Numbered from the stretch's first letter, positions 22,185 to 49,959 are shown. The stretch is DNA of 54,023 nucleotides from Malacoraja senta (GCA_038087875.1 CM075977.1:209011978-209066000); one strand, 5' to 3'. Numbers and translations: made by a program. Notes: generated by a model not told the origin, from the letters alone.

Positions 22185-22301
22185 CTAGTTCACAGTGTTC
22201 CCCAGTAAATCCAGGAAAACAGGTACAGATGTAACTTGTCTCTCGTCGGAAGCAACTTCCTCCGTGATGGCAAGGGCTTTCTTCACATGGGTTAAAATGT
22301 G
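22185..22301 (-). CDS. vcan: Versican G3 EGF-like domain 1 exon (117 bp)
   Basis: tttgtcacag|...|gtaaga, phase 1-1. Translates [39 protein letters not shown], a 6-Cys EGF similar to versican EGF1 (..TETSYVCTCVPGYSGDQCEL). Confidence 0.95.
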
Positions 22302-22419
22302 CTGTGACAAATGCAAATATTGAGAAATGAGCAAGTGCAGTTACATTTTAACCAGTGAACATTTATTCACAGAAAAACCCGAATAAAAATGACAATCTAA
22401 TGACATGTGACAAATTAGT

Positions 22420-25066: not shown

Positions 25067-28000
25067 CTGGAATATGAACAGCCTCTCCATCGTCCGGCCC
25101 GCTTCCAGTTATGGTTTCACCGGTTTTATTAAAGCCCCAATAATCAATATCAGAAATAATTGCCGGATGAATTGTTGATGCCACCATTGGTTTCCGTTAT
25201 TTTGATGTCAGATTCTGTTTCAGTAACATCGGTGCTTCTTGCCAAGAGTTTAGGGGCTTGTGTTAACCTCCGATCTTCTGATCTGTCAGGTGGTGAAGAT
25301 GGGGTAGTCTGGATTTCCTTTAACTTTGTTTGCCTATCAAGTGACACGACCGTCGTATTTTGGAGATCCTGTTGCTCCAATGTCTTCAGCTTCCCTGTCG
25401 AGCTCCGATATAAAGAAGGGGGAACTGTCGTGACCCTGGCGGCTTCCATTACATCCTTTTCAGCTTTACGTTCTGTAGATGGCCGTAAAAATGAAGTACT
25501 GACCACGGTCTCTTTAGAAATCTCCACATAGACTTTTTCTGTTGTTGAAGCCTTTACTTCTTCAAGTGTGACTCCTTGGGAATCGATTGTTGTTCCAACA
25601 CCATGTTCTTTAGCAGGCCTCTTTGCTTCATGCAAAGAAACTTCTTGCTCAGTTACCATATAAGCTGTTGTTCTGAGCGATTCTTTCTCAAATGTTTCAA
25701 GGGGAATGGAGTGTTCTGTTGAGCTTCCCATTTGTTGCAATGTCACATCAAGTTCGGATGAAGCTGTGGTATCATCTATGCCCTCCTCGGTCCTCCTGCC
25801 TGCCATTTGTGAAACCTCTTCATGAATAATAGTCGGCCACATTATTATCTGACTTGCTCCTGTCGTCAAACTTCCCGTTTCTTCCACTTTCATTCCCAGT
25901 GTTGTGGCTTGTGTGCCTTTAAATTCTTCATCCGGCTTTTCTTCAGAGAGCTTCTTTGTTGTATGTTCTTTTTCGTGTACAAAAACTTCAGCAGGCGATG
26001 AGATAAAACTAGCTGTGGATACCTCCACAGGTGTTCTGGGTCTCTGCGTCAAAATTACCGACTGCTCTTCAGCTGTGGGCACAGAAGTTGATTTCATGGA
26101 CAGACTTTTCGTAGTGATTATTTTAAAAACAAATGCAGATGAGGTGGGTGTAGAGGTGGCAGCTTTAACTGGCATGTCACTCAATATTTTACCTTCAGTT
26201 CTTACAGTGCTGTCTCCAGAAAATTCCTCTTTGAATGTACCAAAGGCTTCGATGGGCTTCTCCTGCTCAGTTGCAGACCGAACACTTGAGTACTCTGTAC
26301 CATTGACCATTAAGTATGTTGAGGTTTCTGAAAATGTACTTGGACCATCTCCTTCTTTCAGAGTAGTCCTCACAGTTGCTGCGAGCATCTCTTCTTTACC
26401 AGAAACGGCTTGTGACACATTCTCCTTCATATCTTCAGTGAATGAAGTGGACACTATTTCTCGAGAGGTGTCTGCAACTCTTCCTGGTACAATTGTGCCC
26501 ATCAATGGAGGTAATGTATCCTTCTCTGTATGAAGTTCATGCACACTTGGTCTGATTTTATCAAAGGAAACCATTGTGCTGATTGTTTGTGTTTGTTCCG
26601 GTGTCACTGTCATTAAAGGTGAAGACAGATCTCCTGATCCATCAATCTCTGTCTTAATGAATTTACTCCCGTCTTCAGTGTCATCATACTTCACTGCCTC
26701 AGTTTTGATCTTTTCCAAACTTTGCGTTACATTATCCTTTGGTAGATGAGTTGGAGACACAATTTTTACTTCAATTTCCTGTCTAACATCCTCTAATTTT
26801 CTATCAGCATCAATTATACCATCTGATTTTGTGCTGATTCCGATTTCCTGTTCCTCCAGAATGCTCAACCCACTGTCCTTCCCATTAATATAAATGACAC
26901 TAATATATTCATGAGGACCATCAGTACTTTCATCTCCTGGCAGTTCATCTGCATCATCGCTGGAAATTGTTGGTGACCCTGTTATCTCAACTACAGATTC
27001 CATTGTACCCTGTTGGATCTTTGTCAGTTCTTCTTTAACAGTGTGTCGCATAAGGTCAAATTTCTTATGATCTATCTGTCCAGTCTCAATGCTCTGAATG
27101 ATTTGTGTGTAATTCAAGTGATAGCCATCTGGGATGCTTACCCCATGAACCACCCGAGGCTGAAAACCATCCTTTTCACTTACGGTTAGGACAGGAGTTT
27201 CAGTAATTTCCGCTGTTTTGTTGACGTGAATACTGCTAACAACTATTTGAGGTTCCTTTGATAAAAACTCTTCACCTGTCAGATCAGGGACATAAGTAGT
27301 AGCAGGTTGGATGTCAGACTTTATCTCTGTTAAATTAGAACTTGCTTCCACGGTAAAAATAAGGACTGTTTCACTAGTTCCCTCATGAACACCCCTCAAT
27401 TGCTCCTTGGGAAATGTTGACTGCCTGTAGTAACCTTCAGTTGGTTGCAATTTTGGTTCACTAGAAAGTTCAATTTTCTCTTGTGGTCCTGCAGTGAAAA
27501 TGGTTGGCTGGACTTTTATTGTATGACGACCTTCACCAGAGCTCTCCTGCACACTTAATGGGACAATTGTGCTTGAGCTTACTTCCATAGAATCTCTAGT
27601 TATCAGCACTGTCCTCTCAGTTGAGTCTTCTTCACTTGTACTATCCCCTCCTTCTTCAGAGTGTTCTGATTCTGAAGTCTGGCTTAGTACATCTTCCACT
27701 CCTTCAGCACTTTCTTCTGACACCAATTTTGGCTTCTGTCCCACTGTAACCATCTCAGGCTCCCGCTCAATCTCCATTGGTTTCTTACTTATATTTGTAA
27801 TTTCAACTAAGGAATCTGTGGATGATATCGCTGATGGTTTTTTTGTCACTGAAATTTGCTGGGTGACCTCTGATATCAAAGTACCTTCCTTAGCCTTGCT
27901 ATCTTCATCAGAGATGCCCGTGACTAATGGCAGAGTTGTAATAGTAAAAATGTCTTCACCTGAACTTTCAACTTCCCCAGCCTGAATCTCTGAGGCTGTC

Positions 28001-31000
28001 TTTATCATTGATGGAGTGGATCCTTCAGTTGAGGATTTTACAGATAGCTCTGATTTAGCAGACATGCCTTCCTCCCCTGCTAGAGTAACATCAGCATGGA
28101 GAACACTTGTACTTAATAATGTAACAGTGCCACTCAATTTTGAAACCAAAATCTCTGTACCATCTTTGGCAGATGATTCAGTGCCAAATGTTTCTTCATC
28201 AAAACTCTTAATGACTGAAAAAGGTGTCGGCTCCTGTGAATGCTGGTCTGTTGCAGTAGGTAATCTAATTGCTGGAGATCTCTCAGAAGACTCTGTCGCC
28301 ATGGTTCTTGGCCTGCTTTGCAACACTGTACTTGCTGCTGTTGCTTCTGATGTGGATTTTTGAGACTTTAGTTCAAATGATGGTGTGACGGTTTCATGGC
28401 GAACGCCACCCACCATTTCCCCTATAACTGAAACTGACATAAACCTACTTTCGCTCTCAAAACCACTCGTCGGAAACTTGACGTCCAGTTGTGAATAGGT
28501 TTTCACCAGCAGATCCCCTGCCTCTGTGTGGGTCATTGGCCCAAGTGTGAAAATTCCTTTCCATTTACCAGGTGCAGCTGTAACTGCTGTATGGAGTGCT
28601 TCCTCATCCAAAAACGTTTTGTTCAACAAGGTAACCGGTTGGCTGCTCATTTTTGGAGAGGAATCATCAATAGACAACTGAATTGGTTGCTTAACTGTAA
28701 ACATCTCCACGCCAGAACTCTCAAAGACTTCCAGGAAAGGAGGTTGTTTGTCCAAATCCTTCTCCGTTATTCCAGATACGTCAGTTGCTGGAGGTTGCAC
28801 AGATGGTTCCTCAATAACTTTCTCCGAAATGGTTTGGATCTCAGCGATTATAGATTGTGCTTCTATTGTAGATCCCTGAGACTGCCTTTCAATTCCAGGT
28901 GTCATTGAAGTAGGTGGATACATCTCATCGATTACAATGGTGTCTGGGGAAAATGTGTATGTGGTTTCCTTATCACCAAAAGCGACTGTTGATGCAGACT
29001 GATCTGCCACCTGTGTGTGCACATTGACGAGCAAACCATCCATCTCTGTGTGTGCCTCAGGCAAGCCAGAGCCAGAAAAATCCTCCACAGATTCACGTTC
29101 ATCTGTAGCAGTGCTCTGGAGAGCTTCCACATCCACTAGAGTTTTACTAGTCACTGGTAAAAGAGTAGAGCTAATTTCTATCGTTGAAATAGTAGGGTGT
29201 AATCGAACTATTTTTTCGGCAGTAATCAGTTCTTCCCCAGAACCCTCAAATTCTGGAGAAGGAGGTAATTTGACTGAAACTTTCTCTGTTATTCCCGATT
29301 CCACAATTACTGGAGATTTCACAGTTGATGCTGTAACCAATTTCTCTGGGATGGTTTTGATGCCGGTGATCACTGATGATGCTTCTGATGTGGATTCTTG
29401 TAACTTTGTTTTCATTAATGGAGTAGCAGTGACAGGGCGTTCTCCTTCGACTAGTTCTTTAGTCACTGAATCAAATGTATACCTGGTTTCTTTCTCACCG
29501 GCCACATCTGTTGCTGCAGACCTGTCTTCCACCTGTGTCTGGACTTTTACCATCAAACCATCAGTGCGTGTGTGTGTGTCAGGTAATCCAGATGTTGTTA
29601 TTCCAGTCTCTTGGTCAGTTGCTGCTGGAACAGCACTGTGAAGAGCTTCCTCATCCAAATATAGTTCTGCTTGTCACTGGAGTTTCTTGGCTGCTCATCT
29701 CCAGTGTGGAAACATCAGGTTCAACCCGGCCAGTGTGTCCAATACTGAATGTTTCTTCACCAGAACTCTCAAATTCTGGAGAAGGCTGCAGTTTGTCTGA
29801 AACTTTCTCAGTTATTCCCGATTCATAAATTGCAGAGGGTTTCACAGTTGACGCCATAACCACTTTCCCTGCGATGGTTTCTATCTCAGTGATCACTGAT
29901 GGTATTTCCGATGAGGCTTTTCCAATGACTGGTGTAACTGTATCATGAGGAGAAACCTCTTCTGCTTCGCTGGTGACTGGAACTAACACATATCTGGTTT
30001 CCTTCTCGCCAATCACGATAGTAGATGCAGACATGTCAGTTGTTTGTGTGTGCACTTTAACCAGCAAACCATCCCACTCTGTGTGTATCTCCGACGAGCC
30101 AGACCCAGAAATTTCCTCCTCACTCTCACGAATAACTGTCACGGTGCTCTGGGGAGTTTTTGCATCAACTAGAGTTTTACTGGTGACAGGTAAAAGGGTA
30201 GAGCTTATTTCTGTGGTGGAAATATCAGTTCCAAATTGTGCAATTTGTTTGGAAGTAATCAGCTCTTCACCAGAACTCTCAAATTCTACCGAAGGACGTA
30301 GTTTGACTGAAACTTTCTCTGTTATCTCCGTTTCCACAGTAGCTGGAGATTTCCCAGTTGTTGCTGTATCCACTTTCTCTGGGATGGTTTTGATGCCGGT
30401 GATCACTGATGATGCTTCTGATGTGGTTTCTTGTAACTTTGTTTTCATTAATGGAGTACCAGTGACAGGGCGTTCTCCTTCGACTAGTTCTTTAGTCACT
30501 GAATCAAATGTATACCTGGTTTCTTTCTCACCGGCCACATCTGTTGCTGCAGACCTGTCTTCCACCTGTGTCTGGACTTTTACCATCAAACCATCAGTGC
30601 GTGTGTGTGTGTCAGGTAATCCAGATGTTGTTATTCCAGTCTCTTGGTCAGTTGCTGCTGGAACAGCACTGTGAAGAGCTTCCTCATCCAATATAGTTCT
30701 GCTTGTCACTGGAGTTTCTTGGCTGCTCATCTCCAGTGTGGAAACATCAGGTTCAACCTGGCCAGTGTGTCCAATACTCAATGTTTCTTCACCAGAACTC
30801 TCAAATTCTGGAGAAGGCTGCAGTTTGTCTGAAACTTTCTCAGTTATTCCTGATTCATAAATTGCAGAGGGTTTCACAGTTGACGCCATAACCACTTTCC
30901 CTGCGATGGTTTCGATCTCAGTGATCACTGATGGTATTTCTGATGAGGCTTTTCCAATGACTGGTGTAACTGTATCATGAGGAGAAACCTCTTCTGTTTC

Positions 31001-34000
31001 ACTGGTGACTGGAACTAACACATATCTGGTTTCCTTCTCGCCAATCACGACAGTAGATGCAGACATGTCAGTTGTTTGTGTGTGCACTTTAACCAGCAAA
31101 CCATCCCACTCTGTGTGTATCTCCGACGAGCCAGACCCAGAAATTTCCTCCTCACTGTCACGAATAACTGTCACGGTGCTCTGGGGAGTTTTTGCATCAA
31201 CTAGAGTTTTACTGGTGACAGGTAAAAGGGTAGAGCTTATTTCTGTGGTGGAAATATCAGTTCCAAATTGTGCAATTTGTTTGGAAGTAATCAGCTCTTC
31301 ACCAGAACTCTCAAATTCTACCGAAGGACGTAGTTTGACTGAAACTTTCTCTGTTATCTCCGTTTCCACAGTAGCTGGAGATTTCACAGTTGTTGCTGTA
31401 ACCACTTTCTCTGGGATGGTTTTGATGCCGGTGATCACTGATGATGCTTCTGATGTGGTTTCTTGTAACTTTGTTTTCATTAATGGAGTAGCAGTGACAG
31501 GGCGTTCTCCTTCGACTAGTTCTTTAGTCACTGAATCAAATGTATACCTGGTTTCTTTCTCACCGGCCACATCTGTTGCGGCAGACCTGTCTTCCACCTG
31601 TGTCTGGACTTTTACCATCAAACCATCAGTGCGTGTGTGTGTGTCAGGTAATCCAGATGTTGTTATTCCAGTCTCTTGGTCAGTTGCTGCTGGAACAGCA
31701 CTGTGAAGAGCTTCCTCATCCAATATAGTTCTGCTTGTCACTGGAGTTTCTTGGCTGCTCATCTCCAGTGTGGAACCATCAGTTTCAAAAAGGCCAGTGT
31801 GTCCAATACTCAATGTTTCTTCACCAGAACTCTCAAATTCTGGAGAAGGCTGCAGTTTGTCTGAAACTTTATCAGTTATTCCTGATTCATAAATTGCTGA
31901 GGGATTCACAGTTGACGCCATAACCACTTTCCCTGCGATGGTTTTGATCTCAGTGATCACTGATGGTATTTCCGATGAGGCTTTTCCAATGACTGGTGTA
32001 ACTGTATCATGAGGAGAAACCTCTTCTGTTTCGCTGGTGACTGGAACTAACACATATCTGGTTTCCTTCTCGCCAATCACGACAGTAGATGCAGACATGT
32101 CAGTTGTTTGTGTGTGCACTTTAACCAGCAAACCATCCCACTCTGTGTGTATCTCCGACGAGCCAGACCCAGAAATTTCCTCCTCACTCTCACGAATAAC
32201 TGTCACGGTGCTCTGGGGAGTTTTTGCATCAACTAGAGTTTTACTGGTGACAGGTAAAAGGGTAGAGCTTATTTCTGTGGTGGAAATATCAGTTCCAAAT
32301 TGTGCAATTTGTTTGGAAGTAATCAGCTCTTCACCAGAACTCTCAAATTCTACCGAAGGACGTAGTTTGACTGAAACTTTCTCTGTTATCTCCGTTTCCA
32401 CAGTAGCTGGAGATTTCACAGTTGTTGCTGTAACCACTTTCTCTGGGATGGTTTTGATGCCGGTGATCACTGATGATGCTTCTGATGTGGTTTCTTGTAA
32501 CTTTGTTTTCATTAATGGAGTAGCAGTGACAGGGCGTTCTCCTTCGACTAGTTCTTTTGTCACTGAATCAAATGTATACCTGGTTTCTTTCTCACCGGCC
32601 ACATCTGTTGCTGCAGACCTGTCTTCCACCTGTGTCTGGACTTTTACCATCAAACCATCAGTGCGTGTGTGTGTGTCAGGTAATCCAGATGTTGTTATTC
32701 CAGTCTCTTGGTCAGTTGCTGCTGGAACAGCACTGTGAAGAGCTTCCTCATCCAATATAGTTCTGCTTGTCACTGGAGTTTCTTGGCTGCTCATCTCCAG
32801 TGTGGAAACATCAGGTTCAACCCGGCCAGTGTGTCCAATACTCAATGTTTCTTCACCAGAACTCTCAAATTTTGGAGAAGGCTGCAGTTTGTCTGAAACT
32901 TTCTCAGTTATTCCTGATTCATAAATTGCAGAGGGTTTCACAGTTGACGCCATAACCACTTTCCCTGCGATGGTTTCGATCTCAGTGATCACTGATGGTA
33001 TTTCTGATGAGGCTTTTCCAATGACTGGTGTAACTGTATCATGAGGAGAAACCTCTTCTGTTTCACTGGTGACTGGAACTAACACATATCTGGTTTCCTT
33101 CTCGCCAATCACGACAGTAGATGCAGACTTGTCAGTTGTTTGTGTGTGCACTTTAACCAGCAAACCATCCCACTCTGTGTGTATCTCCGACGAGCCAGAC
33201 CCAGAAATGTCCTCCTCACTCTCACGAATAACTGTCACGGTGCTCTGGGGAGTTTTTGCATCAACTAGAGTTTTAATGGTGACAGGTAAAAGGGTAGGGC
33301 TTATTTCTGTGGTGGAAATATCAGTTCCAAATTGTGCAATTTGTTTGGAAGTAATCAGCTCTTCACCAGAACTCTCAAATTCTACAGAAGGAAGTAGTTT
33401 GACTGAAACTGTCTCTGTTATCTCCGTTTCCACAGTAGCTGGAGATTTCACAGTTGTTGCTGTAACCACTTTCTCTGGGATGGTTTTGATGCCGGTGATC
33501 ACTGATGATGCTTCTGATGTGGTTTCTTGTAACTTTGTTTTCATTAATGGAGTACCAGTGACAGGGCGTTCTCCTTCGACTAGTCCTTTAGTCACTGAAT
33601 CAAATGTATACCTGGTTTCTTTCTCACCGGCCACATCTGTTGCTGCAGACCTGTCTTCCACCTGTGTCTGGACTTTTACCATCAAACCATCAGTGCGTGT
33701 GTGTGTGTCAGGTAATCCAGATGTTGTTATTCCAGTCTCTTGGTCAGTTGCTGCTGGAACAGCACTGTGAAGAGCTTCCTCATCCAATATAGTTCTGCTT
33801 GTCACTGGAGTTTCTTGGCTGCTCATCTCCAGTGTGGAAACATCAGGTTCAACCCGGCCAGTGTGTCCAATACTCAATGTTTCTTCACCAGAACTCTCAA
33901 ATTCTGGAGAAGGCTGCAGTTTGTCTGAAACTTTCTCAGTTATTCCTGATTCATAAATTGCAGAGGGTTTCACAGTTGACGCCATAACCACTTTCCTTGC

Positions 34001-37000
34001 GATGGTTTCGATCTCAGTGATCACTGATGGTATTTCTGATGAGGCTTTTCCAATGACTGGTGTAACTGTATCATGAGGAGAAACCTCTTCTGTTTCACTG
34101 GTGACTGGAACTAACACATATCTGGTTTCCTTCTCGCCAATCACGACAGTAGATGCAGACTTGTCAGTTGTTTGTGTGTGCACTTTAACCAGCAAACCAT
34201 CCCACTCTGTGTGTATCTCCGACGAGCCAGACCCAGAAATTTCCTCCTCACTCTCACGAATAACTGTCACGGTGCTCTGGGGAGTTTTTGCATCAACTAG
34301 AGTTTTACTGGTGACAGGTAAAAGGGTAGAGCTTATTTCTGTGGTGGAAATATCAGTTCCAAATTGTGCAATTTGTTTGGAAGTAATCAGCTCTTCACCA
34401 GAACTCTCAAATTCTACCGAAGGACGTAGTTTGACTGAAACTTTCTCTGTTATCTCCGTTTCCACAGTAGCTGGAGATTTCACAGTTGTTGCTGTAACCA
34501 CTTTCTCTGGGATGGTTTTGATGCCGGTGATCACTGATGATGCTTCTGATGTGGTTTCTTGTAACTTTGTTTTCATTAATGGAGTAGCAGTGACAGGGCG
34601 TTCTCCTTCGACTAGTTCTTTTGTCACTGAATCAAATGTATACCTGGTTTCTTTCTCACCGGCCACATCTGTTGCTGCAGACCTGTCTTCCACCTGTGTC
34701 TGGACTTTTACCATCAAACCATCAGTGCGTGTGTGTGTGTCAGGTAATCCAGATGTTGTTATTCCAGTCTCTTGGTCAGTTGCTGCTGGAACAGCACTGT
34801 GAAGAGCTTCCTCATCCAATATAGTTCTGCTTGTCACTGGAGTTTCTTGGCTGCTCATCTCCAGTGTGGAAACATCAGGTTCAACCCGGCCAGTGTGTCC
34901 AATACTCAATGTTTCTTCACCAGAACTCTCAAATTTTGGAGAAGGCTGCAGTTTGTCTGAAACTTTCTCAGTTATTCCTGATTCATAAATTGCAGAGGGT
35001 TTCACAGTTGACGCCATAACCACTTTCCCTGCGATGGTTTCGATCTCAGTGATCACTGATGGTATTTCTGATGAGGCTTTTCCAATGACTGGTGTAACTG
35101 TATCATGAGGAGAAACCTCTTCTGTTTCACTGGTGACTGGAACTAACACATATCTGGTTTCCTTCTCGCCAATCACGACAGTAGATGCAGACTTGTCAGT
35201 TGTTTGTGTGTGCACTTTAACCAGCAAACCATCCCACTCTGTGTGTATCTCCGACGAGCCAGACCCAGAAATGTCCTCCTCACTCTCACGAATAACTGTC
35301 ACGGTGCTCTGGGGAGTTTTTGCATCAACTAGAGTTTTAATGGTGACAGGTAAAAGGGTAGGGCTTATTTCTGTGGTGGAAATATCAGTTCCAAATTGTG
35401 CAATTTGTTTGGAAGTAATCAGCTCTTCACCAGAACTCTCAAATTCTACAGAAGGAAGTAGTTTGACTGAAACTGTCTCTGTTATCTCCGTTTCCACAGT
35501 AGCTGGAGATTTCACAGTTGTTGCTGTAACCACTTTCTCTGGGATGGTTTTGATGCCGGTGATCACTGATGATGCTTCTGATGTGGTTTCTTGTAACTTT
35601 GTTTTCATTAATGGAGTACCAGTGACAGGGCGTTCTCCTTCGACTAGTCCTTTAGTCACTGAATCAAATGTATACCTGGTTTCTTTCTCACCGGCCACAT
35701 CTGTTGCTGCAGACCTGTCTTCCACCTGTGTCTGGACTTTTACCATCAAACCATCAGTGCGTGTGTGTGTGTCAGGTAATCCAGATGTTGTTATTCCAGT
35801 CTCTTGGTCAGTTGCTGCTGGAACAGCACTGTGAAGAGCTTCCTCATCCAATATAGTTCTGCTTGTCACTGGAGTTTCTTGGCTGCTCATCTCCAGTGTG
35901 GAAACATCAGGTTCAACCCGGCCAGTGTGTCCAATACTCAATGTTTCTTCACCAGAACTCTCAAATTCTGGAGAAGGCTGCAGTTTGTCTGAAACTTTCT
36001 CAGTTATTCCTGATTCATAAATTGCAGAGGGTTTCACAGTTGACGCCATAACCACTTTCCTTGCGATGGTTTCGATCTCAGTGATCACTGATGGTATTTC
36101 TGATGAGGCTTTTCCAATGACTGGTGTAACTGTATCATGAGGAGAAACCTCTTCTGTTTCACTGGTGACTGGAACTAACACATATCTGGTTTCCTTCTCG
36201 CCAATCACGACAGTAGATGCAGACTTGTCAGTTGTTTGTGTGTGCACTTTAACCAGCAAACCATCCCACTCTGTGTGTATCTCCGACGAGCCAGACCCAG
36301 AAATTTCCTCCTCACTCTCACGAATAACTGTCACGGTGCTCTGGGGAGTTTTTGCATCAACTAGAGTTTTACTGGTGACAGGTAAAAGGGTAGAGCTTAT
36401 TTCTGTGGTGGAAATATCAGTTCCAAATTGTGCAATTTGTTTGGAAGTAATCAGCTCTTCACCAGAACTCTCAAATTCTACCGAAGGACGTAGTTTGACT
36501 GAAACTTTCTCTGTTATCTCCGTTTCCACAGTAGCTGGAGATTTCACAGTTGTTGCTGTAACCACTTTCTCTGGGATGGTTTTGATGCCGGTGATCACTG
36601 ATGATGCTTCTGATGTGGTTTCTTGTAACTTTGTTTTCATTAATGGAGTAGCAGTGACAGGGCGTTCTCCTTCGACTAGTTCTTTTGTCACTGAATCAAA
36701 TGTATACCTGGTTTCTTTCTCACCGGCCACATCTGTTGCTGCAGACCTGTCTTCCACCTGTGTCTGGACTTTTACCATCAAACCATCAGTGCGTGTGTGT
36801 GTGTCAGGTAATCCAGATGTTGTTATTCCAGTCTCTTGGTCAGTTGCTGCTGGAACAGCACTGTGAAGAGCTTCCTCATCCAATATAGTTCTGCTTGTCA
36901 CTGGAGTTTCTTGGCTGCTCATCTCCAGTGTGGAAACATCAGGTTCAACCCGGCCAGTGTGTCCAATACTCAATGTTTCTTCACCAGAACTCTCAAATTT

Positions 37001-40000
37001 TGGAGAAGGCTGCAGTTTGTCTGAAACTTTCTCAGTTATTCCTGATTCATAAATTGCAGAGGGTTTCACAGTTGACGCCATAACCACTTTCCCTGCGATG
37101 GTTTCGATCTCAGTGATCACTGATGGTATTTCTGATGAGGCTTTTCCAATGACTGGTGTAACTGTATCATGAGGAGAAACCTCTTCTGTTTCACTGGTGA
37201 CTGGAACTAACACATATCTGGTTTCCTTCTCGCCAATCACGACAGTAGATGCAGACTTGTCAGTTGTTTGTGTGTGCACTTTAACCAGCAAACCATCCCA
37301 CTCTGTGTGTATCTCCGACGAGCCAGACCCAGAAATGTCCTCCTCACTCTCACGAATAACTGTCACGGTGCTCTGGGGAGTTTTTGCATCAACTAGAGTT
37401 TTAATGGTGACAGGTAAAAGGGTAGGGCTTATTTCTGTGGTGGAAATATCAGTTCCAAATTGTGCAATTTGTTTGGAAGTAATCAGCTCTTCACCAGAAC
37501 TCTCAAATTCTACAGAAGGAAGTAGTTTGACTGAAACTGTCTCTGTTATCTCCGTTTCCACAGTAGCTGGAGATTTCACAGTTGTTGCTGTAACCACTTT
37601 CTCTGGGATGGTTTTGATGCCGGTGATCACTGATGATGCTTCTGATGTGGTTTCTTGTAACTTTGTTTTCATTAATGGAGTACCAGTGACAGGGCGTTCT
37701 CCTTCGACTAGTCCTTTAGTCACTGAATCAAATGTATACCTGGTTTCTTTCTCACCGGCCACATCTGTTGCTGCAGACCTGTCTTCCACCTGTGTCTGGA
37801 CTTTTACCATCAAACCATCAGTGCGTGTGTGTGTGTCAGGTAATCCAGATGTTGTTATTCCAGTCTCTTGGTCAGTTGCTGCTGGAACAGCACTGTGAAG
37901 AGCTTCCTCATCCAATATAGTTCTGCTTGTCACTGGAGTTTCTTGGCTGCTCATCTCCAGTGTGGAAACATCAGGTTCAACCCGGCCAGTGTGTCCAATA
38001 CTCAATGTTTCTTCACCAGAACTCTCAAATTCTGGAGAAGGCTGCAGTTTGTCTGAAACTTTCTCAGTTATTCCTGATTCATAAATTGCAGAGGGTTTCA
38101 CAGTTGACGCCATAACCACTTTCCTTGCGATGGTTTCGATCTCAGTGATCACTGATGGTATTTCTGATGAGGCTTTTCCAATGACTGGTGTAACTGTATC
38201 ATGAGGAGAAACCTCTTCTGTTTCACTGGTGACTGGAACTAACACATATCTGGTTTCCTTCTCGCCAATCACGACAGTAGATGCAGACTTGTCAGTTGTT
38301 TGTGTGTGCACTTTAACCAGCAAACCATCCCACTCTGTGTGTATCTCCGACGAGCCAGACCCAGAAATGTCCTCCTCACTCTCACGAATAACTGTCACGG
38401 TGCTCTGGGGAGTTTTTGCATCAACTAGAGTTTTACTGGTGACAGGTAAAAGGGTAGGGCTTATTTCTGTGGTGGAAATATCAGTTCCAAATTGTGCAAT
38501 TTGTTTGGAAGTAATCAGCTCTTCACCAGAACTCTCAAATTCTACAGAAGGAAGTAGTTTGACTGAAACTGTCTCTGTTATCTCCGTTTCCACAGTAGCT
38601 GGAGATTTCACAGTTGTTGCTGTAACCACTTTCTCTGGGATGGTTTTGATGCCGGTGATCACTGATGATGCTTCTGATGTGGTTTCTTGTAACTTTGTTT
38701 TCATTAATGGAGTAGCAGTGACAGGGCGTTCTCCTTCGACTAGTTCTTTAGTCACTGAATCAAATGTATACCTGGTTTCTTTCTCACCGGCCACATCTGT
38801 TGCTGCAGACCTGTCTTCCACCTGTGTCTGGACTTTTACCATCAAACCATCAGTGCGTGTGTGTGTGTCAGGTAATCCAGATGTTGTTATTCCAGTCTCT
38901 TGGTCAGTTGCTGCTGGAACAGCACTGTGAAGAGCTTCCTCATCCAATATAGTTCTGCTTGTCACTGGAGTTTCTTGGCTGCTCATCTCCAGTGTGGAAC
39001 CATCAGTTTCAAAAAGGCCAGTGTGTCCAATACTCAATGTTTCTTCACCAGAACTCTCAAATTCTGGAGAAGGCTGCAGTTTGTCTGAAACTTTCTCAGT
39101 TATTCCTGATTCATAAATTGCTGAGGGATTCACAGTTGACGCCATAACCACTTTCCCTGCGATGGTTTTGATCTCAGTGATCACTGATGGTATTTCCGAT
39201 GAGGCTTTTCCAATGACTGGTGTAACTGTATCATGAGGAGAAACCTCTTCTGTTTCGCTGGTGACTGGAACTAACACATATCTGGTTTCCTTCTCGCCAA
39301 TCACGACAGTAGATGCAGACATGTCAGTTGTTTGTGTGTGCACTTTAACCAGCAAACCATCCCACTCTGTGTGTATCTCCGACGAGCCAGACCCAGAAAT
39401 TTCCTCCTCATTGTCACGAATAACTGTCACGGTGCTCTGGGGAGTTTTTGCATCAACTAGAGTTTTACTGGTGACAGGTAAAAGGGTAGAGCTTATTTCT
39501 GTGGTGGAAATATCAGTTCCAAATTGTGCAATTTGTTTGGAAGTAATCAGCTCTTCACCAGAACTCTCAAATTCTACCGAAGGACGTAGTTTGACTGAAA
39601 CTTTCTCTGTTATCTCCGTTTCCACAGTAGCTGGAGATTTCACAGTTGTTGCTGTAACCACTTTCTCTGGGATGGTTTTGATGCCGGTGATCACTGATGA
39701 TGCTTCTGATGTGGTTTCTTGTAACTTTGTTTTCATTAATGGAGTAGCAGTGACAGGGCGTTCTCCTTCGACTAGTTCTTTTGTCACTGAATCAAATGTA
39801 TACCAGGTTTCTTTCTCACCGGCCACATCTGTTGCTGCAGACCTGTCTTCCACCTGTGTCTGGACTTTTACCATCAAACCATCAGTGCGTGTGTGTGTGT
39901 CAGGTAATCCAGATGTTGTTATTCCAGTCTCTTGGTCAGTTGCTGCTGGAACAGCACTGTGAAGAGCTTCCTCATCCAATATAGTTCTGCTTGTCACTGG

Positions 40001-43000
40001 AGTTTCTTGGCTGCTCATCTCCAGTGTGGAAACATCAGGTTCAACCCGGCCAGTGTGTCCAATACTCAATGTTTCTTCACCAGAACTCTCAAATTCTGGA
40101 GAAGGCTGCAGTTTGTCTGAAACTTTATCAGTTATTCCTGATTCATAAATTGCAGAGGGTTTCACAGTTGACGCCATAACCACTTTCCCTGCGATGGTTT
40201 CTATCTCAGTGATCACTGATGGTATTTCTGATGAGGCTTTTCCAATGACTGGTGTAACTGTATCATGAGGAGAAACCTCTTCTGTTTCACTGGTGACTGG
40301 AACTAACACATATCTGGTTTCCTTCTCGCCAATCACGACAGTAGATGCAGACTTGTCAGTTGTTTGTGTGTGCACTTTAACCAGCAAACCATCCCACTCT
40401 GTGTGTATCTCCGACGAGCCAGACCCAGAAATGTCCTCCTCACTCTCACGAATAACTGTCACGGTGCTCTGGGGAGTTTTTGCATCAACTAGAGTTTTAC
40501 TGGTGACAGGTAAAAGGGTAGGGCTTATTTCTGTGGTGGAAATATCAGTTCCAAATTGTGCAATTTGTTTGGAAGTAATCAGCTCTTCACCAGAACTCTC
40601 AAATTCTACAGAAGGAAGTAGTTTGACTGAAACTGTCTCTGTTATCTCCGTTTCCACAGTAGCTGGAGATTTCACAGTTGTTGCTGTAACCACTTTCTCT
40701 GGGATGGTTTTGATGCCGGTGATCACTGATGATGCTTCTGATGTGGTTTCTTGTAACTTTGTTTTCATTAATGGAGTAGCAGTGACAGGGCGTTCTCCTT
40801 CGACTAGTTCTTTAGTCACTGAATCAAATGTATACCTGGTTTCTTTCTCACCGGCCACATCTGTTGCTGCAGACCTGTCTTCCACCTGTGTCTGGACTTT
40901 TACCATCAAACCATCAGCGCGTGTGTGTGTGGCAGGTAATCCAGATGTTGTTATTCCAGTCTCTTGGTCAGTTGCTGCTGGAACAGCACTGTGAAGAGCT
41001 TCCTCATCCAATATAGTTCTGCTTGTCACTGGAGTTTCTTGGCTGCTCATCTCCAGTGTGGAACCATCAGTTTCAAAAAGGCCAGTGTGTCCAATACTCA
41101 ATTTTTCTTCACTAGAACTCTCAAATTCTGGAGAAGGCTGCAGTTTGTCTGAAACTTTCTCAGTTATTCCTGATTCATAAATTGCTGAGGGATTCACAGT
41201 TGACGCCATAACCACTTTCCCTGCGATGGTTTTGATCTCAGTGATCACTGATGGTATTTCCGATGAGGCTTTTCCAATGACTGGTGTAACTGTATCATGA
41301 GGAGAAACCTCTTCTGTTTCGCTGGTGACTGGAACTAACACATATCTGGTTTCCTTCTCGCCAATCACGACAGTAGATGCAGACATGTCAGTTGTTTGTG
41401 TGTGCACTTTAACCAGCAAACCATCCCACTCTGTGTGTATCTCCGACGAGCCAGACCCAGAAATTTCCTCCTCACTGTCACGAATAACTGTCACGGTGCT
41501 CTGGGGAGTTTTTGCATCAACTAGAGTTTTACTGGTGACAGGTAAAAGGGTAGAGCTTATTTCTGTGGTGGAAATATCAGTTCCAAATTGTGCAATTTGT
41601 TTGGAAGTAATCAGCTCTTCACCAGAACTCTCAAATTCTACCGAAGGACGTAGTTTGACTGAAACTTTCTCTGTTATCTCCGTTTCCACAGTAGCTGGAG
41701 ATTTCCCAGTTGTTGCTGTAACCACTTTCTCTGGGATGGTTTTGATGCCGGTGATCACTGATGATGCTTCTGATGTGGTTTCTTGTAACTTTGTTTTCAT
41801 TAATGGAGTAGCAGTGACAGGGCGTTCTCCTTCGACTAGTTCTTTTGTCACTGAATCAAATGTATACCTGGTTTCTTTCTCACCTGCCACATCTGTTGCT
41901 GCAGACCTGTCTTCCACCTGTGTCTGGACTTTTACCATCAAACCATCAGTGCGTGTGTGTGTGTCAGGTAATCCAGATGTTGTTATTCCAGTCTCTTGGT
42001 CAGTTGCTGCTGGAACAGCACTGTGAAGAGCTTCCTCATCCAATATAGTTCTGCTTGTCACTGGAGTTTCTTGGCTGCTCATCTCCAGTGTGGAAACATC
42101 AGGTTCAACCCGGCCAGTGTGTCCAATACTCAATGTTTCTTCACCAGAACTCTCAAATTCTGGAGAAGGCTGCAGTTTGTCTGAAACTTTCTCAGTTATT
42201 CCTGATTCATAAATTGCAGAGGGTTTCACAGTTGACGCCATAACCACTTTCCCTGCGATGGTTTCGATCTCAGTGATCACTGATGGTATTTCTGATGAGG
42301 CTTTTCCAATGACTGGTGTAACTGTATCATGAGGAGAAACCTCTTCTGTTTCACTGGTGACTGGAACTAACACATATCTGGTTTCCTTCTCGCCAATCAC
42401 GACAGTAGATGCAGACTTGTCAGTTGTTTGTGTGTGCACTTTAACCAGCAAACCATCCCACTCTGTGTGTATCTCCGACGAGCCAGACCCAGAAATGTCC
42501 TCCTCACTCTCACGAATAACTGTCACGGTGCTCTGGGGAGTTTTTGCATCAACTAGAGTTTTACTGGTGACAGGTAAAAGGGTAGAGCTTATTTCTGTGG
42601 TGGAAATATCAGTTCCAAATTGTGCAATTTGTTTGGAAGTAATCAGCTCTTCACCAGAACTCTCAAATTCTACAGAAGGAAGTAGTTTGACTGAAACTGT
42701 CTCTGTTATCTCCGTTTCCACAGTAGCTGGAGATTTCACAGTTGTTGCTGTAACCACTTTCTCTGGGATGGTTTTGATGCCGGTGATCACTGATGATGCT
42801 TCTGATGTGGTTTCTTGTAACTTTGTTTTCATTAATGGAGTACCAGTGACAGGGCGTTCTCCTTCGACTAGTCCTTTAGTCACTGAATCAAATGTATACC
42901 TGGTTTCTTTCTCACCGGCCACATCTGTTGCTGCAGACCTGTCTTCCACCTGTGTCTGGACTTTTACCATCAAACCATCAGTGCGTGTGTGTGTGTCAGG

Positions 43001-46000
43001 TAATCCAGATGTTGTTATTCCAGTCTCTTGGTCAGTTGCTGCTGGAACAGCACTGTGAAGAGCTTCCTCATCCAATATAGTTCTGCTTGTCACTGGAGTT
43101 TCTTGGCTGCTCATCTCCAGTGTGGAAACATCAGGTTCAACCCGGCCAGTGTGTCCAATACTCAATGTTTCTTCACCAGAACTCTCAAATTTTGGAGAAG
43201 GCTGTAGTTTGTCTGAAACTTTCTCAGTTATTCCCGATTCATAAATTGCAGAGGGTTTCACAGTTGACGCCATAACCACTTTCCCTGCGATGGTTTCGAT
43301 CTCAGTGATCACTGATGGTATTTCTGATGAGGCTTTTCCAATGACTGGTGTAACTGTATCATGAGGAGAAACCTCTTCTGTTTCACTGGTGACTGGAACT
43401 AACACATATCTGGTTTCCTTCTCGCCAATCACGACAGTAGATGCAGACTTGTCAGTTGTTTGTGTGTGCACTTTAACCAGCAAACCATCCCACTCTGTGT
43501 GTATCTCCGACGAGCCAGACCCAGAAATGTCCTCCTCACTCTCACGAATAACTGTCACGGTGCTCTGGGGAGTTTTTGCATCAACTAGAGTTTTACTGGT
43601 GACAGGTAAAAGGGTAGAGCTTATTTCTGTGGTGGAAATATCAGTTCCAAATTGTGCAATTTGTTTGGAAGTAATCAGCTCTTCACCAGAACTCTCAAAT
43701 TCTACAGAAGGAAGTAGTTTGACTGAAACTGTCTCTGTTATCTCCGTTTCCACAGTAGCTGGAGATTTCACAGTTGTTGCTGTAACCACTTTCTCTGGGA
43801 TGGTTTTGATGCCGGTGATCACTGATGATGCTTCTGATGTGGTTTCTTGTAACTTTGTTTTCATTAATGGAGTACCAGTGACAGGGCGTTCTCCTTCGAC
43901 TAGTCCTTTAGTCACTGAATCAAATGTATACCTGGTTTCTTTCTCACCGGCCACATCTGTTGCTGCAGACCTGTCTTCCACCTGTGTCTGGACTTTTACC
44001 ATCAAACCATCAGTGCGTGTGTGTGTGTCAGGTAATCCAGATGTTGTTATTCTAGTCTCTTGGTCAGTTGCTGCTGGAACAGCACTGTGAAGAGCTTCCT
44101 CATCCAATATAGTTCTGCTTGTCACTGGAGTTTTTTGGCTGCTCATCTCCAGTGTGGAAACATCAGGTTCAACCCGGCCAGTGTGTCCAATACTCAATGT
44201 TTCTTCACCAGAACTCTCAAATTCTGGAGAAGGCTGCAGTTTGTCTGAAACTTTCTCAGTTATTCCCGATTCATAAATTGCAGAGGGTTTCACAGTTGAC
44301 GCCATAACCACTTTCCCTGCGATGGTTTCGATCTCAGTGATCACTGATGGTATTTCTGATGAGGCTTTTCCAATGACTGGTGTAACTGTATCATGAGGAG
44401 AAACCTCTTCTGTTTCACTGGTGACTGGAACTAACACATATCTGGTTTCCTTCTCGCCAATCACGACAGTAGATGCAGACTTGTCAGTTGTTAGTGTGTG
44501 CACTTTAACCAGCAAACCATCCCACTCTGTGTGTATCTCCGACGAGCCAGACCCAGAAATGTCCTCCTCACTCTCACGAATAACTGTCACGGTGCTCTGG
44601 GGAGTTTTTGCATCAACTAGAGTTTTACTGGTGACAGGTAAAAGGGTAGGGCTTATTTCTGTGGTGGAAATATCAGTTCCAAATTGTGCAATTTGTTTGG
44701 AAGTAATCAGCTCTTCACCAGAACTCTCAAATTCTACAGAAGGAAGTAGTTTGACTGAAACTGTCTCTGTTATCTCCGTTTCCACAGTAGCTGGAGATTT
44801 CACAGTTGTTGCTGTAACCACTTTCTCTGGGATGGTTTTGATGCCGGTGATCACTGATGATGCTTCTGATGTGGTTTCTTGTAACTTTGTTTTCATTAAT
44901 GGAGTACCAGTGACAGGGCGTTCTCCTTCGACTAGTTCTTTTGTCACTGAATCAAATGTATACCTGGTTTCTTTCTCACCGGCCACATCTGTTGCCTGCA
45001 TGAGGACTTTTACCATCAATCCTTCTCTATGTGTGTGTGCCTCAGGTAATGTAGATGTTGTTATTCCAGTCTCTTGATCAGTTGCTGCTGGAACAGTACT
45101 GTGAAGTACCTCCCCATCCAAAGATATTCTGCTGGTCACTGGAGTTTCTTGGCCCCTCACCTCTAATGTGGATGCACCAGGTTGAAACTGGCCAGTGGGT
45201 TTGATGTTAAATAATCCTTCACCAGAACTCTCAAACTCTGGAAAAGACGTTAGTTTGTCTGAAACTCGCTCCGTTATTCCAGATTCCTCAATTACTGGAG
45301 GTATCACAGTTGACTCCATATCCACTTTCTCTGGGGTGGTTTTGATTTCAGTGATGACTGACGGTGCCTCTGATGAGGATTGTTGAGATGTTTTTTCAAT
45401 TGCAGGTGTAACGGTATCATGGGGAACTCTCTCCTCTACTTCACTGGTTACTGAAGCTGATGCATATCTGGTTACCTTGTCACCATCCGCAACTGTTGAA
45501 GCAGCAGACTCATCTGTCACCTGGGTGTACCCTATCATCGGCACACCAACGTCCCTCTCTGTTGTTGCCTCTGTCCAGCCCGACGCAGTAGAATGCTCCT
45601 CACTCTCACCTGCAACTGGAACTGTGCTGTAGGGAACTTCCCCATCCATTAAAGTTTTACTAGTCACCGGTAAAAATGTAGAGCTCATTCCCATCATGGA
45701 AATATCAGGACCAAATTGAACAACTTGTTTGGAAGTAATCAGTTCTGCGCCAGAACTCTCAAATTCTAGAGGAGGCAGTTTGACGGAAACGTTCTCTGTT
45801 ATTCCTGATTCCACAGTTGCTGGAGATTTCACTGTTCTTGCTGTAACTGCTTTCTCTGGGATGGTTTTGACCTTAGTGATCATTGATGGTGTTTCTGAGG
45901 TGAATTCTTCTGACCTTTCTTTCATTACTGGGGTAGCAGTGACAGGGCGTTCTCCAGCATCCATTTTTCTTGTCACTGAATCAAATGTATATCTGGTTTC

Positions 46001-49000: not shown

Positions 49001-49959
49001 ACTAAGCATTTCTCCACCACGACTCTCATCAGGTCCAGGTGTGGACAAGGTTTCTGTGTACATTTCTATCGTTGCTGCTGTTTCCTGTTTTACATCTTTT
49101 TCAAAGGTTCTTGGATATAGTTCTGGCTCCCTTGGTTTGGTAGTTGTTTTATGGGGGGCACCTGGAATTGTAGTAGAAACCGGCTCAAACCCTTCAACAG
49201 AAGCCTCAACCGTTTCTTTATCAATTGTTTCGTGTGAAATGATGTCTTCAGTCCTGGTCACTGTTTCAGTTTTTGGTGAAGTAACGTCTTCTGACGCAGT
49301 TGTAACAATCCCAAAGAGGTGAGGTTTTTCCTCCGTTGATTCTGTGGTGAAAATCTGTTTGGGTGTCTTTTGAGCATCTCTGGATGAAGCAGCATCTTGC
49401 GTGCTGGGTGAGATGACCCAATGTTCTCCAGCAACACTAGAATGGATTCCCATCTGCTCTTCTGTAAACGTGGGTCTTTCAGATGGACTTTTAACACTGG
49501 AAACTGTTTTTGATCTCTCAGTGGAGATTCCTGGTTCCTGACTTTCAGCAGTTCCACTCTCAATCGTTGAGAAGTCCTCCTTGCTTTCGTCATCTTTTTC
49601 TATAACATCCATGTCTGGTATTGCACTTATACTGGGAGATACCCTTTCCACTTGGTCTCCCCTGGCTTCCTCACCACGGGTATAAGGCGGCTCAAATTCT
49701 ATCCGCGTCTTCCCATTAATAAAGCTGAGCGATTGGTGAGCATCCTGCACTGGAGCCGCTGTGGGAACTTGCGGGAAGACAAATTTGGTAAAGTCAGATT
49801 CTCCACTGCCGATGATTCCACCCTCCTCCTCTCTGACATCAAAGTGAATGTGCATAAAGTGAATCTTGGAGCCCGATCGTTGCGTCACACCTTCAGCCGA
49901 TTGATTGAGTGGCAATAAAAGTGGTTCTGTTGGAGTTTTTCCAGCTTCTGGTACAAGCT
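25067..49959 (-). CDS. vcan: Versican giant GAG-beta (chondroitin-sulfate attachment) exon, ~8,297 codons after correcting two +1 frameshifts
   Basis: Acceptor ttttttaatgtatttacag|AG (exon starts 49959) and donor CCAG|gtatga (exon ends 25067), both phase 1. Covered by ORFs 29651-50002 and 25150-29658, which are S/T/E-rich with many SG dipeptides. The N-terminal FINGK...EEARGDQVERVSP resembles versican YINGK...AEARRGQFESVAP, and the C-terminal GEAVHIP resembles GTAIYLP before EGF1. Length 24,893 = 3n+2, matching two single-base insertions. Confidence 0.9.
28400..29319 (-). repeat. Diverged monomers of the coding repeat (3' flank of array)
   Basis: EFEGSGEE (~29240) and VFESSGVE (~28715) anchors with the same downstream motifs. 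Confidence 0.8.
29320..44995 (-). repeat. Coding tandem array of ~15 near-identical 1032-bp units (344 aa)
   Basis: Identical landmarks recur every 1032 bp (shadow ORFs start at 29973, 31005, 32037 ... 44421 = 15 copies). Units differ by scattered substitutions only. Confidence 0.97.
44996..48345 (-). repeat. Older diverged ~170-aa monomers of the same coding repeat (5' flank of array)
   Basis: FESSG/FESSS/IVSSR anchors at about 45225, 45755, 46275, 46790, 47310, 47830 and 48335, each followed by ..PVTSRT..GLLVKVHT..KETRY..SVITEIKT motifs with in-frame indels. Confidence 0.9.

What the first reader, a model, noticed from the sequence alone, without database searches (positions are those of the whole stretch)
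29320..44995. Recent 15-fold amplification of a 344-aa cassette multiplies candidate GAG attachment sites
Seen: 15 near-identical 1032-bp units, each with six Ser-Gly dipeptides (FESSGEEL, ISGSG x2, YESGI, FESSGEET, TTSGL), so ~90 in the array, several in acidic xylosyltransferase-favoured contexts. Known: human versican GAG-beta is non-repetitive with an estimated 12-15 chains, whereas aggrecan CS1 has a short-unit coding VNTR. Inference: versican here has convergently gained an aggrecan/mucin-like VNTR with a very large unit, a possible copy-number dial for matrix charge and hydration.
Basis: partly seen in the sequence, partly recalled or inferred. Interest (0 to 1): 0.8.

Follow-up and report, generated by a model that had tools for sequence, protein, structure and literature searches.

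The report
Giant repeat-expanded versican exon in a skate
A skate's versican gene has one 24.9-kb coding exon holding 15 near-identical 344-residue cassettes, each with conserved sugar-chain attachment motifs; the cassette is an old shark-and-ray repeat that skates have multiplied, giving several times more candidate attachment sites than any other versican compared here.

Summary
Window 29260-44740 (minus strand) holds exactly 15 in-frame 1032-bp units that differ at 0-30 positions. Each has six Ser-Gly, 90 in all. Word depth in two DNA runs of the same species is about 13-14 times the flank, so the array is not an assembly artefact.

The gene is versican. The array lies in the GAG-beta exon (25067-49959, about 8,297 codons), followed by the EGF and C-type lectin exons of G3.

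"Recent, convergent amplification" is only partly right. The unit is a dimer of a ~170-residue module found in every shark and ray versican examined (5-26 copies) and in none of nine bony-vertebrate versicans. Rhinoraja, Leucoraja and two closer relatives also carry multi-copy 1032-bp arrays. The window's units form a clade of their own, which points to array turnover or concerted evolution.

The most conserved module columns are the Ser and Gly of E-S-S-G-E and T-S-G-L-P-E, which supports glycosaminoglycan attachment. Substitution, expression in this species and copy-number polymorphism remain untested.

Two 1-nt frame breaks are probably assembly errors; the one at 25191 is contradicted by reads.

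The same scan noted this stretch in two other first-reader notes (s1-172349, s1-172310).

The parts
25067..49959 (-). Versican GAG-beta exon (exon 8 equivalent). It is 24,893 nt as assembled. Without the two suspect extra bases it is 24,891 nt = 8,297 codons, and it contains no Cys.
   Evidence: Acceptor ...TTTACAG|AG and donor CAG|GTATGA were located. The N-terminal block aligns to the GAG-beta start region of chicken V1, gar, sparrow and batoid/shark versicans. The Rhinoraja orthologous exon is 22,560 nt and forms one open frame.
29260..44740 (-). Array of 15 near-identical 1032-bp (344-aa) units. Each unit is a dimer of 170 + 174 aa modules and carries six Ser-Gly.
   Evidence: Depth is about 13-14 times the flank in two same-species DNA runs.
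32357..37516 (-). Youngest layer of the array: a 2064-bp super-unit (two units) repeated 2.5 times with zero differences.
   Evidence: matrix.
44741..48847 (-). Older, diverged copies of the same module lying 5' of the array in the coding direction. They are positionally orthologous to units in Rhinoraja and Leucoraja.
28231..29259 (-). Older diverged dimer lying 3' of the array. It groups with the last dimer of Pristis.
29657..29659 (.). Frame break 1: AAA where all other units have AA. It splits the open frame into 6783 + 1502 aa.
   Evidence: No contig of any of the four runs carries the extra base, but the same-species contigs there are collapsed repeat contigs, so this is unresolved. It is probably an assembly indel (table 4).
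25191..25193 (.). Frame break 2: TTT where the reads have TT. It creates a false stop about 85 nt before the real donor.
   Evidence: table 4: one base is 'left out' at 25191 in the single-copy contigs of all four runs, including both runs of the same species. Without it the frame matches Rhinoraja up to the donor.
22186..22308 (-). G3 EGF-like exon 1.
   Evidence: tblastn with Pristis versican; Pfam EGF at 3e-09.
18841..18954 (-). G3 EGF-like (calcium-binding type) exon 2.
   Evidence: EGF at 1.2e-07.
4208..4369 (-). First C-type lectin exon of G3.
   Evidence: tblastn gives 96% identity to Pristis versican residues 4478-4531. Pfam Lectin_C scores 21.2 bits, just under the cut-off, because only one exon of the domain was scanned.

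Best explanation
This is the GAG-beta exon of the versican gene of a skate.

Its central part is built from a ~170-residue, Cys-free, acidic, Ser/Thr-rich module that is predicted to be disordered. The module carries two strongly conserved Ser-Gly motifs, E-S-S-G-E and T-S-G-L-P-E. All elasmobranch versicans examined repeat it in tandem.

In skates a dimer of this module (1032 bp, 344 aa) became the unit of a coding tandem array. The inferred mechanism is unequal crossing-over or gene conversion between units. It has kept the array at about 15 copies and has homogenised it separately in each lineage:
- In this species one unit type fills the array, with a 2-unit super-repeat as its youngest layer.
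- In Rhinoraja the array is a 4-unit higher-order repeat.
- In Leucoraja it is a 2-unit higher-order repeat.

Each added unit lengthens the core protein by 344 residues and adds six Ser-Gly, five of them in acidic contexts of the kind favoured by xylosyltransferase. The exon therefore offers 126 Ser-Gly, against 23-43 in whole bony-vertebrate versicans. The expected effect is a much longer bottle-brush with more chondroitin/dermatan sulfate chains at roughly unchanged spacing.

Shown here: the array, its copy number, gene identity, repeat phylogeny, motif conservation and frame conservation across genera.
Inferred: the recombination mechanism, actual GAG substitution, and any physiological effect.
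For: Array and copy number: (depth about 13-14 times the flank in X1 and X2).

Gene identity:
- The best homologs are batoid 'versican core protein-like' proteins at 49-59% identity, with Ig, link, EGF, lectin and sushi Pfam domains.
- EGF and lectin exons lie downstream.
- The conserved block SFINGK...EEARGDQ aligns to chicken V1, gar and sparrow versican.

Module distribution:
- Skates: 40 in this exon, 36 in Rhinoraja.
- Sharks: 25-26 in Scyliorhinus canicula and Chiloscyllium plagiosum, 18 in Mustelus, 5 in Heptranchias.
- Rays and relatives: 14 in myliobatiform rays, 9 in Pristis, 7 in Narcine.
- None in nine bony-vertebrate versicans at E<=10.
- Only 8 representatives in 1.84 billion proteins match, all elasmobranch.

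Motif conservation: across 144 non-redundant modules the top two columns are the S and G of ESSGE, at 0.81 and 0.78 with occupancy 0.83. The SG of TSGLPE stands at 0.74 and 0.68, and S7 and G8 are at least 90% conserved in alignment A1.

Disorder: the AlphaFold model has mean pLDDT 46.9, pTM 0.09 and no secondary structure.

Constraint:
- The Rhinoraja exon is one 7553-aa open frame, 22,560 nt = 3 x 7520.
- The window exon is 3 x 8297 nt once the two extra bases are discounted.
- dN/dS between the window consensus unit and Rhinoraja type A is 0.39-0.49; for the flanks it is 0.55.

Concerted evolution: the window's 15 units form one tight clade, while the flanking old units pair with their positional orthologs in other skates. 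The edge units are the most diverged.

Relatives: organisms C and D, about 5% diverged, show 7-22 times depth over the unit.
Against: - No expression data exist for this species.
- Within the array dN/dS is 0.93, so the differences between copies look neutral.
- One Ser-Gly (the G of the second ESSGE) is lost in one unit.
- The extra A at 29657 could be real. It would then truncate the product before G3.
- Depth-based copy number is rough.
- An ancient array cannot be cleanly separated from independent amplifications in each skate genus.
Confidence: 0.75

Rival explanations
1. One reading: a single, very recent amplification private to this species of a cassette that was single-copy before. 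Versican would then have gained a VNTR by convergence with aggrecan.
For: The units are 97-100% identical, with stretches that show no differences at all. The window's units form a species-specific clade. Different skate genera amplify different unit types or higher-order repeats, which fits independent expansions from a few ancestral dimers such as those rays keep.
Against: Multi-copy arrays with the same 1032-bp period occur at the same place in Rhinoraja, in Leucoraja, and by depth in two species only about 5% diverged. Those relatives show similar depth multiples. The module and its dimer organisation predate skates.
Confidence: 0.15
2. The array is an assembly artefact, meaning over-expansion of a shorter repeat by the assembler.
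For: Five units are pairwise identical. The assembly has at least one proven 1-nt indel error in this exon.
Against: Contig word depth over the unit is about 13-14 times the flank in two separate samples. An independent assembly of another genus has 14-15 units in one open frame.
Confidence: 0.03
3. The frame break at 29657 is real. The allele would then encode a versican truncated inside the array (no distal GAG-beta, no G3) or be removed by nonsense-mediated decay, making the array a decaying relic.
For: The assembled sequence has the extra A. Collapsed contigs cannot exclude a 1-in-15 variant.
Against: An extra base of the same kind (a two-base run read as three) at 25191 is contradicted by single-copy contigs of both same-species runs. 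Removing both bases gives an exon of exactly 8,297 codons. The 1,502-aa frame downstream stays open and orthologous to Rhinoraja with dN/dS 0.55. The single-copy path contig of organism D also lacks one base there.
Confidence: 0.05
4. The repeats act mainly as a mucin-like, O-GalNAc-glycosylated or keratan-sulfate-bearing spacer, and most Ser-Gly sites carry no chondroitin sulfate.
For: Ser+Thr make up 28% of the unit and Thr is its commonest residue. NCBI pipelines label skate and shark fragments 'mucin-17-like'. No sequence rule predicts GAG attachment (PMC13038410). Site spacing is wide, about 57 and 112 residues.
Against: The Ser and Gly of ESSGE are the most conserved columns of the whole module over the shark-ray divergence, more so than any Thr. 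That is what a specific xylosylation site predicts and a generic mucin region does not. The acidic flanks fit the preferences of XT1 (PMC13038410). The two functions do not exclude each other.
Confidence: 0.2

Closest known systems
Versican (VCAN/PG-M) GAG-beta domain of bony vertebrates
   Same: Same gene by orthology and same exon position, directly before the two EGF exons of G3. The central region is likewise Cys-free, acidic and Ser/Thr-rich. The block around EEARGDQ near the exon start is conserved. Published description: GAG-alpha is exon 7, GAG-beta is exon 8, V0 is 3396 aa, and the two domains together hold about 30 potential GAG sites (PMC4859157).
   Different: The exon is about 8,297 codons. 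The nine bony-vertebrate whole versicans compared here are only 2,635-3,583 aa, and from memory the human GAG-beta exon is about 5.3 kb. It is built from 40 copies of a ~170-aa module that a profile does not detect in gar, lizard, turtle or bird versicans. It has 126 Ser-Gly in this exon alone, against 23-43 per whole protein.
Aggrecan CS1 coding VNTR
   Same: It is also a lectican whose GAG-attachment region is an in-frame tandem array, so copy number sets the number of attachment sites. In humans there are 13-44 copies of a 19-aa unit, and length associates with height (10.1101/2021.01.19.427332).
   Different: The unit here is 18 times longer (344 aa against 19 aa). Ser-Gly density is about 1.7 per 100 aa, far below the roughly two Ser-Gly per 19-residue unit that I recall for aggrecan CS1 (from memory). 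The array has a nested structure of monomer, dimer and super-unit. Polymorphism has not been shown here.
Mucin tandem-repeat (PTS) exons, for example MUC1 and giant central mucin exons
   Same: Very large single coding exons made of near-identical tandem units that encode disordered, heavily glycosylated Ser/Thr-rich sequence, evolving by unequal recombination. Pipelines even label fragments 'mucin-17-like'.
   Different: The protein is a hyalectan with G3 (and, in orthologs, G1) modules. The conserved columns are Ser-Gly in acidic context rather than Pro/Thr/Ser runs. Pro is only about 5%.
Higher-order repeat arrays (alpha-satellite type) and coding macrosatellites
   Same: The hierarchy runs from monomer to dimer to multi-unit higher-order repeat. 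Homogenisation is lineage-specific, and the edge units are more diverged.
   Different: The array is entirely protein-coding and keeps its frame over 22-25 kb in two genera.

Membership tests
Versican (hyalectan/lectican family) | [quoted passage not shown] | tested here: met
   The EGF exons at 22186-22308 and 18841-18954 and the first lectin exon at 4208-4369 match Pristis versican G3 at 76-96% identity and Pfam EGF/Lectin_C. The remaining lectin and CCP exons lie outside the window.
Versican (hyalectan/lectican family) | Large Cys-free central GAG-attachment region encoded by a giant exon directly upstream of G3 (GAG-beta, exon 8). | tested here: met
   Exon 25067-49959 has 0 Cys in 8,270 residues. 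Its N-terminus aligns to the GAG-beta start region of chicken V1, gar and sparrow versican and to residue ~1471 of Pristis versican.
Versican (hyalectan/lectican family) | N-terminal G1: an Ig-like fold plus two link (hyaluronan-binding) modules. | not testable with these tools
   The upstream exons are outside the window. The orthologous batoid proteins carry PF07686 and PF00193.
Chondroitin/dermatan sulfate attachment sites | Ser followed by Gly with nearby acidic residues. | tested here: met
   There are six Ser-Gly per unit, five with two or more Asp/Glu within 5 residues; 75 of 90 in the array are of that kind. ESSGE and TSGLPE are the most conserved columns in 144 modules.
Chondroitin/dermatan sulfate attachment sites | The Ser actually carries the xylose-initiated linkage tetrasaccharide and a GAG chain. 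| not testable with these tools
   This needs glycoproteomics.
Coding VNTR (aggrecan CS1 or mucin type) | In-frame, head-to-tail, near-identical units. | tested here: met
   15 units of 1032 nt (3 x 344) with 0-30 differences, all open.
Coding VNTR (aggrecan CS1 or mucin type) | Copy number varies among individuals of the species. | tested here: inconclusive
   Two samples of the species give similar depth multiples of about 13-14 by bin means. The resolution is too low to see a difference of 1-2 units. Between genera the exon differs by 2,331 nt.

The most novel reading that the evidence does not exclude
Skate versican is a ~10,000-residue proteoglycan whose GAG-beta domain is a copy-number-variable coding macrosatellite. 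Under this reading, array length differs among individuals and species and sets the number of chondroitin sulfate chains (potentially more than 100, in the range of aggrecan). That would give elasmobranchs, whose ~170-aa module is a lineage-specific invention, a tunable space-filling matrix component. A more remote possibility is that it contributes to specialised elasmobranch hydrogels.
Probability: 0.25. Interest if true: 0.7.

Novelty: new variant of a known kind. Interest (0 to 1): 0.55.

Why it matters
Versican is usually described as having a non-repetitive GAG-beta domain with a modest number of chains. Here it is modular in a whole vertebrate class and expanded in skates.

- The single coding exon is about 8,300 codons, among the largest I know of in vertebrates (from memory).
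- The whole core protein would be roughly 10,000 residues, estimated by adding the flanking parts of the Pristis ortholog.

This offers a natural experiment on how core-protein length and GAG-site number evolve. It also gives a conserved and easily testable pair of candidate xylosylation motifs.

There is a practical warning too: current skate annotations break this gene into 'uncharacterized' or 'mucin-17-like' fragments, and no intact skate versican was found in the protein collections searched.

I found no paper describing the repeat in four full-text searches, but the library is incomplete.

Tried and rejected
- Tandem Repeats Finder found nothing in the array because its longest period is 500.
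- Pfam gave no family for the unit or the exon ends.
- AlphaFold on a 50-row module alignment gave no fold (pLDDT 46.9), which I take as disorder, so no fold search was run.
- The module profile found nothing in gar, lizard, turtle or bird versicans, so homology to bony-vertebrate GAG-beta could not be shown.
- I considered using the second run search to look for the three-A variant at 29657. I dropped the idea because one search already showed that no laid contig of X1 or X2 carries it and that Logan contigs drop rare variants. The search was used for RNA runs instead. It found only relatives' runs at 5-8% of words and no RNA run of this species.
- The third protein search, placed inside the array, returned no intact skate versican.
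- The Leucoraja locus ends inside its array and its frame switches several times. I used it only for unit types, not for copy number or frame.
- The idea that versican is the core of the ampullary jelly rests on nothing found here. A review only says the gel is a keratan-sulfate mucin-like glycoconjugate (PMC10987296).
Full report
**1. What is in the sequence**

A lag-1032 self-comparison gives 95-100% identity from about 29500 to 43750. The repeat finder places copies every 1032 nt, each itself made of 510 + 522-nt halves about 64% alike, with more diverged ~516-nt copies on both sides from 28738 to 48352.

The span 29260-44740 is 15 x 1032 + 1 nt. The pairwise matrix shows 0-30 differences among the 15 units. 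The edge unit (29260) is the most diverged. Units 32357, 34421 and 36485 are identical, as are 33389 and 35453, so a 2064-bp super-unit is repeated 2.5 times without a difference. The next unit (44741) is about 88% alike.

All of this lies in a minus-strand open frame of 6783 aa (29651-50002), followed by one of 1502 aa (25150-29658).

**2. Is the array real?**

I laid Logan contigs of four runs on 24300-30292, a stretch that holds only one unit, so every copy must pile onto it.
- All four runs are genomic, because one contig spans intron and exon at equal depth.
- In the two runs of the window's own species (two samples), word depth is 28.9 in the flank against 374-410 in the unit (X1), and 3.89 against bin means of 37-70 (X2). 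Both give about 13-14 times.
- The tool cautions that summed word depth is a rough measure.

Two related species, about 4-6% diverged in the flank, show the same jump: 10.1 against 124-225, and about 80 against 550-1650.

**3. Two frame breaks**

The two open frames are separated by one extra A (AAA at 29657-29659, where every other unit has AA).

A second break was found by comparison with Rhinoraja and Pristis. The assembled frame stops about 85 nt before a good donor (CAG|GTATGA, last exon base 25067), and the +1 frame there matches the orthologs.
- In one search (table 4) one base at 25191 (TTT against TT) is 'left out' in the single-copy contigs of all four runs, including both from the same species. 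That break is an assembly error.
- The break at 29657 is of the same kind. It is absent from every contig, but there the same-species contigs are collapsed repeat contigs, so it is not formally resolved.
- Discounting both bases, the exon (25067-49959) is 24,891 nt, exactly 8,297 codons.
- The Rhinoraja exon is 22,560 nt, or 7,520 codons.

A length that is a multiple of three fits what I recall, from memory, as the phase-symmetric cassette nature of exon 8; its skipping in isoforms V2 and V3 is described in PMC4859157.

**4. Which gene**

- Residues 15-560 of the exon hit batoid 'versican core protein-like' proteins at 49-59% identity. These proteins carry Ig, link, EGF, C-lectin and sushi domains.
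- Downstream on the same strand lie two EGF exons (22186-22308, 18841-18954) and the first C-lectin exon (4208-4369). They match the G3 of Pristis versican at 76-96% identity and match Pfam EGF and Lectin_C.
- The block SFINGK...EEARGDQ near the exon start aligns to chicken V1, gar and sparrow versican, and to residue ~1471 of Pristis versican.

This is therefore the GAG-beta exon. Flank identity is about 92% to Rhinoraja longicauda and about 90% to Leucoraja erinacea, which makes the source a skate.

Adding about 1,460 upstream and about 310 downstream residues, as in Pristis, the full-length core protein would be near 10,000 residues. That figure is an inference.

**5. The repeat is old; the homogeneity is young**

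A phmmer search of the unit against 1.84 billion representatives found only 8 proteins. All are elasmobranch versican, 'PG-M' or 'mucin-17-like' models.

A profile of the ~170-aa module gave the following counts:

| Source | Modules |
|---|---|
| This exon | 40 |
| Rhinoraja | 36 |
| Chiloscyllium plagiosum | 26 |
| Scyliorhinus canicula | 25 |
| Scyliorhinus torazame | 22 |
| Mustelus | 18 |
| Chiloscyllium punctatum | 15 |
| Myliobatiform rays | 14 |
| Heterodontus | 12 |
| Pristis | 9 |
| Narcine | 7 |
| Heptranchias | 5 |
| Gar, three lizards, two turtles, three birds | 0 (E<=10, filters off) |

Only the skates have many modules with a twin at 90% identity or more: 30 here and 26 in Rhinoraja.

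Arrays in other skates:
- Rhinoraja has 14-15 units of 1032 bp in three types, arranged roughly A-A-B-C, inside one 7553-aa open frame.
- Leucoraja has at least 10 units of two alternating types, 97-98% alike within a type and 91% between types.

In the unit tree, the window's 15 units form one tight clade, sister to Rhinoraja types A and B. The old flanking units instead pair with their positional orthologs. At the protein level, skate dimers, myliobatiform dimers and Pristis/Narcine dimers each cluster by lineage, except the last dimer.

This is the pattern of array turnover or concerted evolution. Independent amplifications from a few ancestral dimers cannot be excluded.

Mean dS within the array is 0.014, against 0.11-0.14 between the flanks of this species and Rhinoraja. 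The present set of units therefore coalesces at roughly a tenth of that divergence, and the identical super-units are much younger.

**6. Function**

Motif conservation:
- Across 144 non-redundant modules from 13 species, the two most conserved columns are the Ser and Gly of E-S-S-G-E (0.81 and 0.78 at 0.83 occupancy).
- The Ser-Gly of T-S-G-L-P-E follows at 0.74 and 0.68.
- S7 and G8 are at least 90% conserved in the 50-row alignment.

Other properties of the module:
- It is predicted to be disordered (pLDDT 46.9, pTM 0.09, no secondary structure).
- It is acidic (55 Asp+Glu against 30 Lys+Arg per unit), 28% Ser+Thr, and Cys-free.

Published work describes GAG sites as a central Ser flanked by Gly or Ala within acidic patches.

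I therefore read the module as a GAG-attachment cassette. The array lengthens the bottle-brush: 126 Ser-Gly in this exon against 23-43 in whole bony-vertebrate versicans. Density is nearly unchanged, at 1.5-1.7 against 0.7-1.2 per 100 aa, so the molecule is aggrecan-like in total load but not in spacing.

Selection measures:
- Between species, dN/dS is 0.39-0.49 for the unit and 0.55 for the flanks.
- Within the array it is 0.93, from 10 synonymous and 30 non-synonymous variable sites. The copy differences look neutral, and one copy has lost one Ser-Gly.

**7. What is not shown**

- Expression in this species.
- GAG substitution.
- Copy-number polymorphism.
- The status of the A at 29657.

**8. 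Literature and novelty**

The standard description of versican is 15 exons, a V0 of 3396 aa and about 30 potential GAG sites over GAG-alpha and GAG-beta (PMC4859157). The best-known lectican coding VNTR is aggrecan CS1, with a 19-aa unit in 13-44 copies and a length associated with height (10.1101/2021.01.19.427332).

Four full-text searches found nothing on repeats in elasmobranch versican.

Protein databases hold the skate gene only in fragments: Rhinoraja as 1505 + 3687 aa 'uncharacterized' models, and Leucoraja as a 2102-aa 'mucin-17-like' model.

Two other first-reader notes of this scan describe the same stretch, as the monomer-dimer-array hierarchy and as the ~24.9-kb exon. Both agree with what I measured.

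**9. Verdict**

'Recent convergent amplification' should be replaced by 'skate-wide, concertedly evolving array built on an elasmobranch-specific versican module'.

This is a new variant of a known kind: a lectican GAG domain organised as a large-unit coding tandem array. It is of moderate to good interest for matrix biology and repeat evolution.

Noticed in passing
window 25191-25193 and 29657-29659: Two single-base insertions, each a two-base run read as three, inside a 24.9-kb exon. The first is contradicted by contigs of two same-species runs. This assembly seems to carry short-homopolymer indel errors that break long open frames, which matters for any gene model from it.
   Followed up: yes
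window 15946-16365 (-): A 140-aa open stretch in an intron that resembles the C-terminal tail of a fish or shark retrotransposon ORF (by recollection). Its only Pfam hit is PF09004 (ALKBH8_N, 8.4e-06), which is probably due to that repeat family rather than a real ALKBH8 domain.
   Followed up: partly
window 16000-18000, including 17680-17767: A GC-rich island (0.51 against about 0.39 around it) in the intron between the lectin and EGF exons. It has a 42-bp tandem repeat (2.1 copies) and a 296-aa plus-strand ORF (17129-18019) with no Pfam match. It was not explained.
   Followed up: partly
window ~22750-23100 (intron between the GAG-beta exon and EGF exon 1): A ~350-nt element that matches several other places in the Rhinoraja and Leucoraja loci at 79-86% identity on both strands. 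It is probably an interspersed repeat.
   Followed up: no
L001+L003 (Rhinoraja longicauda) merged coordinates 2244-24803; L002 (Leucoraja erinacea) 72205-87049: Public annotations split the skate versican exon into separate 'uncharacterized' or 'mucin-17-like' genes. The Rhinoraja exon is in fact one 7,520-codon exon. The Leucoraja array changes frame at least four times (77046, 81182, 83134, 84528), which is probably due to assembly indels.
   Followed up: partly
P0046 (Scyliorhinus canicula), P0043 (Chiloscyllium plagiosum), P0001 (Pristis): A few modules in sharks and sawfish also have twins at 90% identity or more (4, 4 and 2 modules). Small recent duplications of the module therefore occur outside skates too.
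   Followed up: partly
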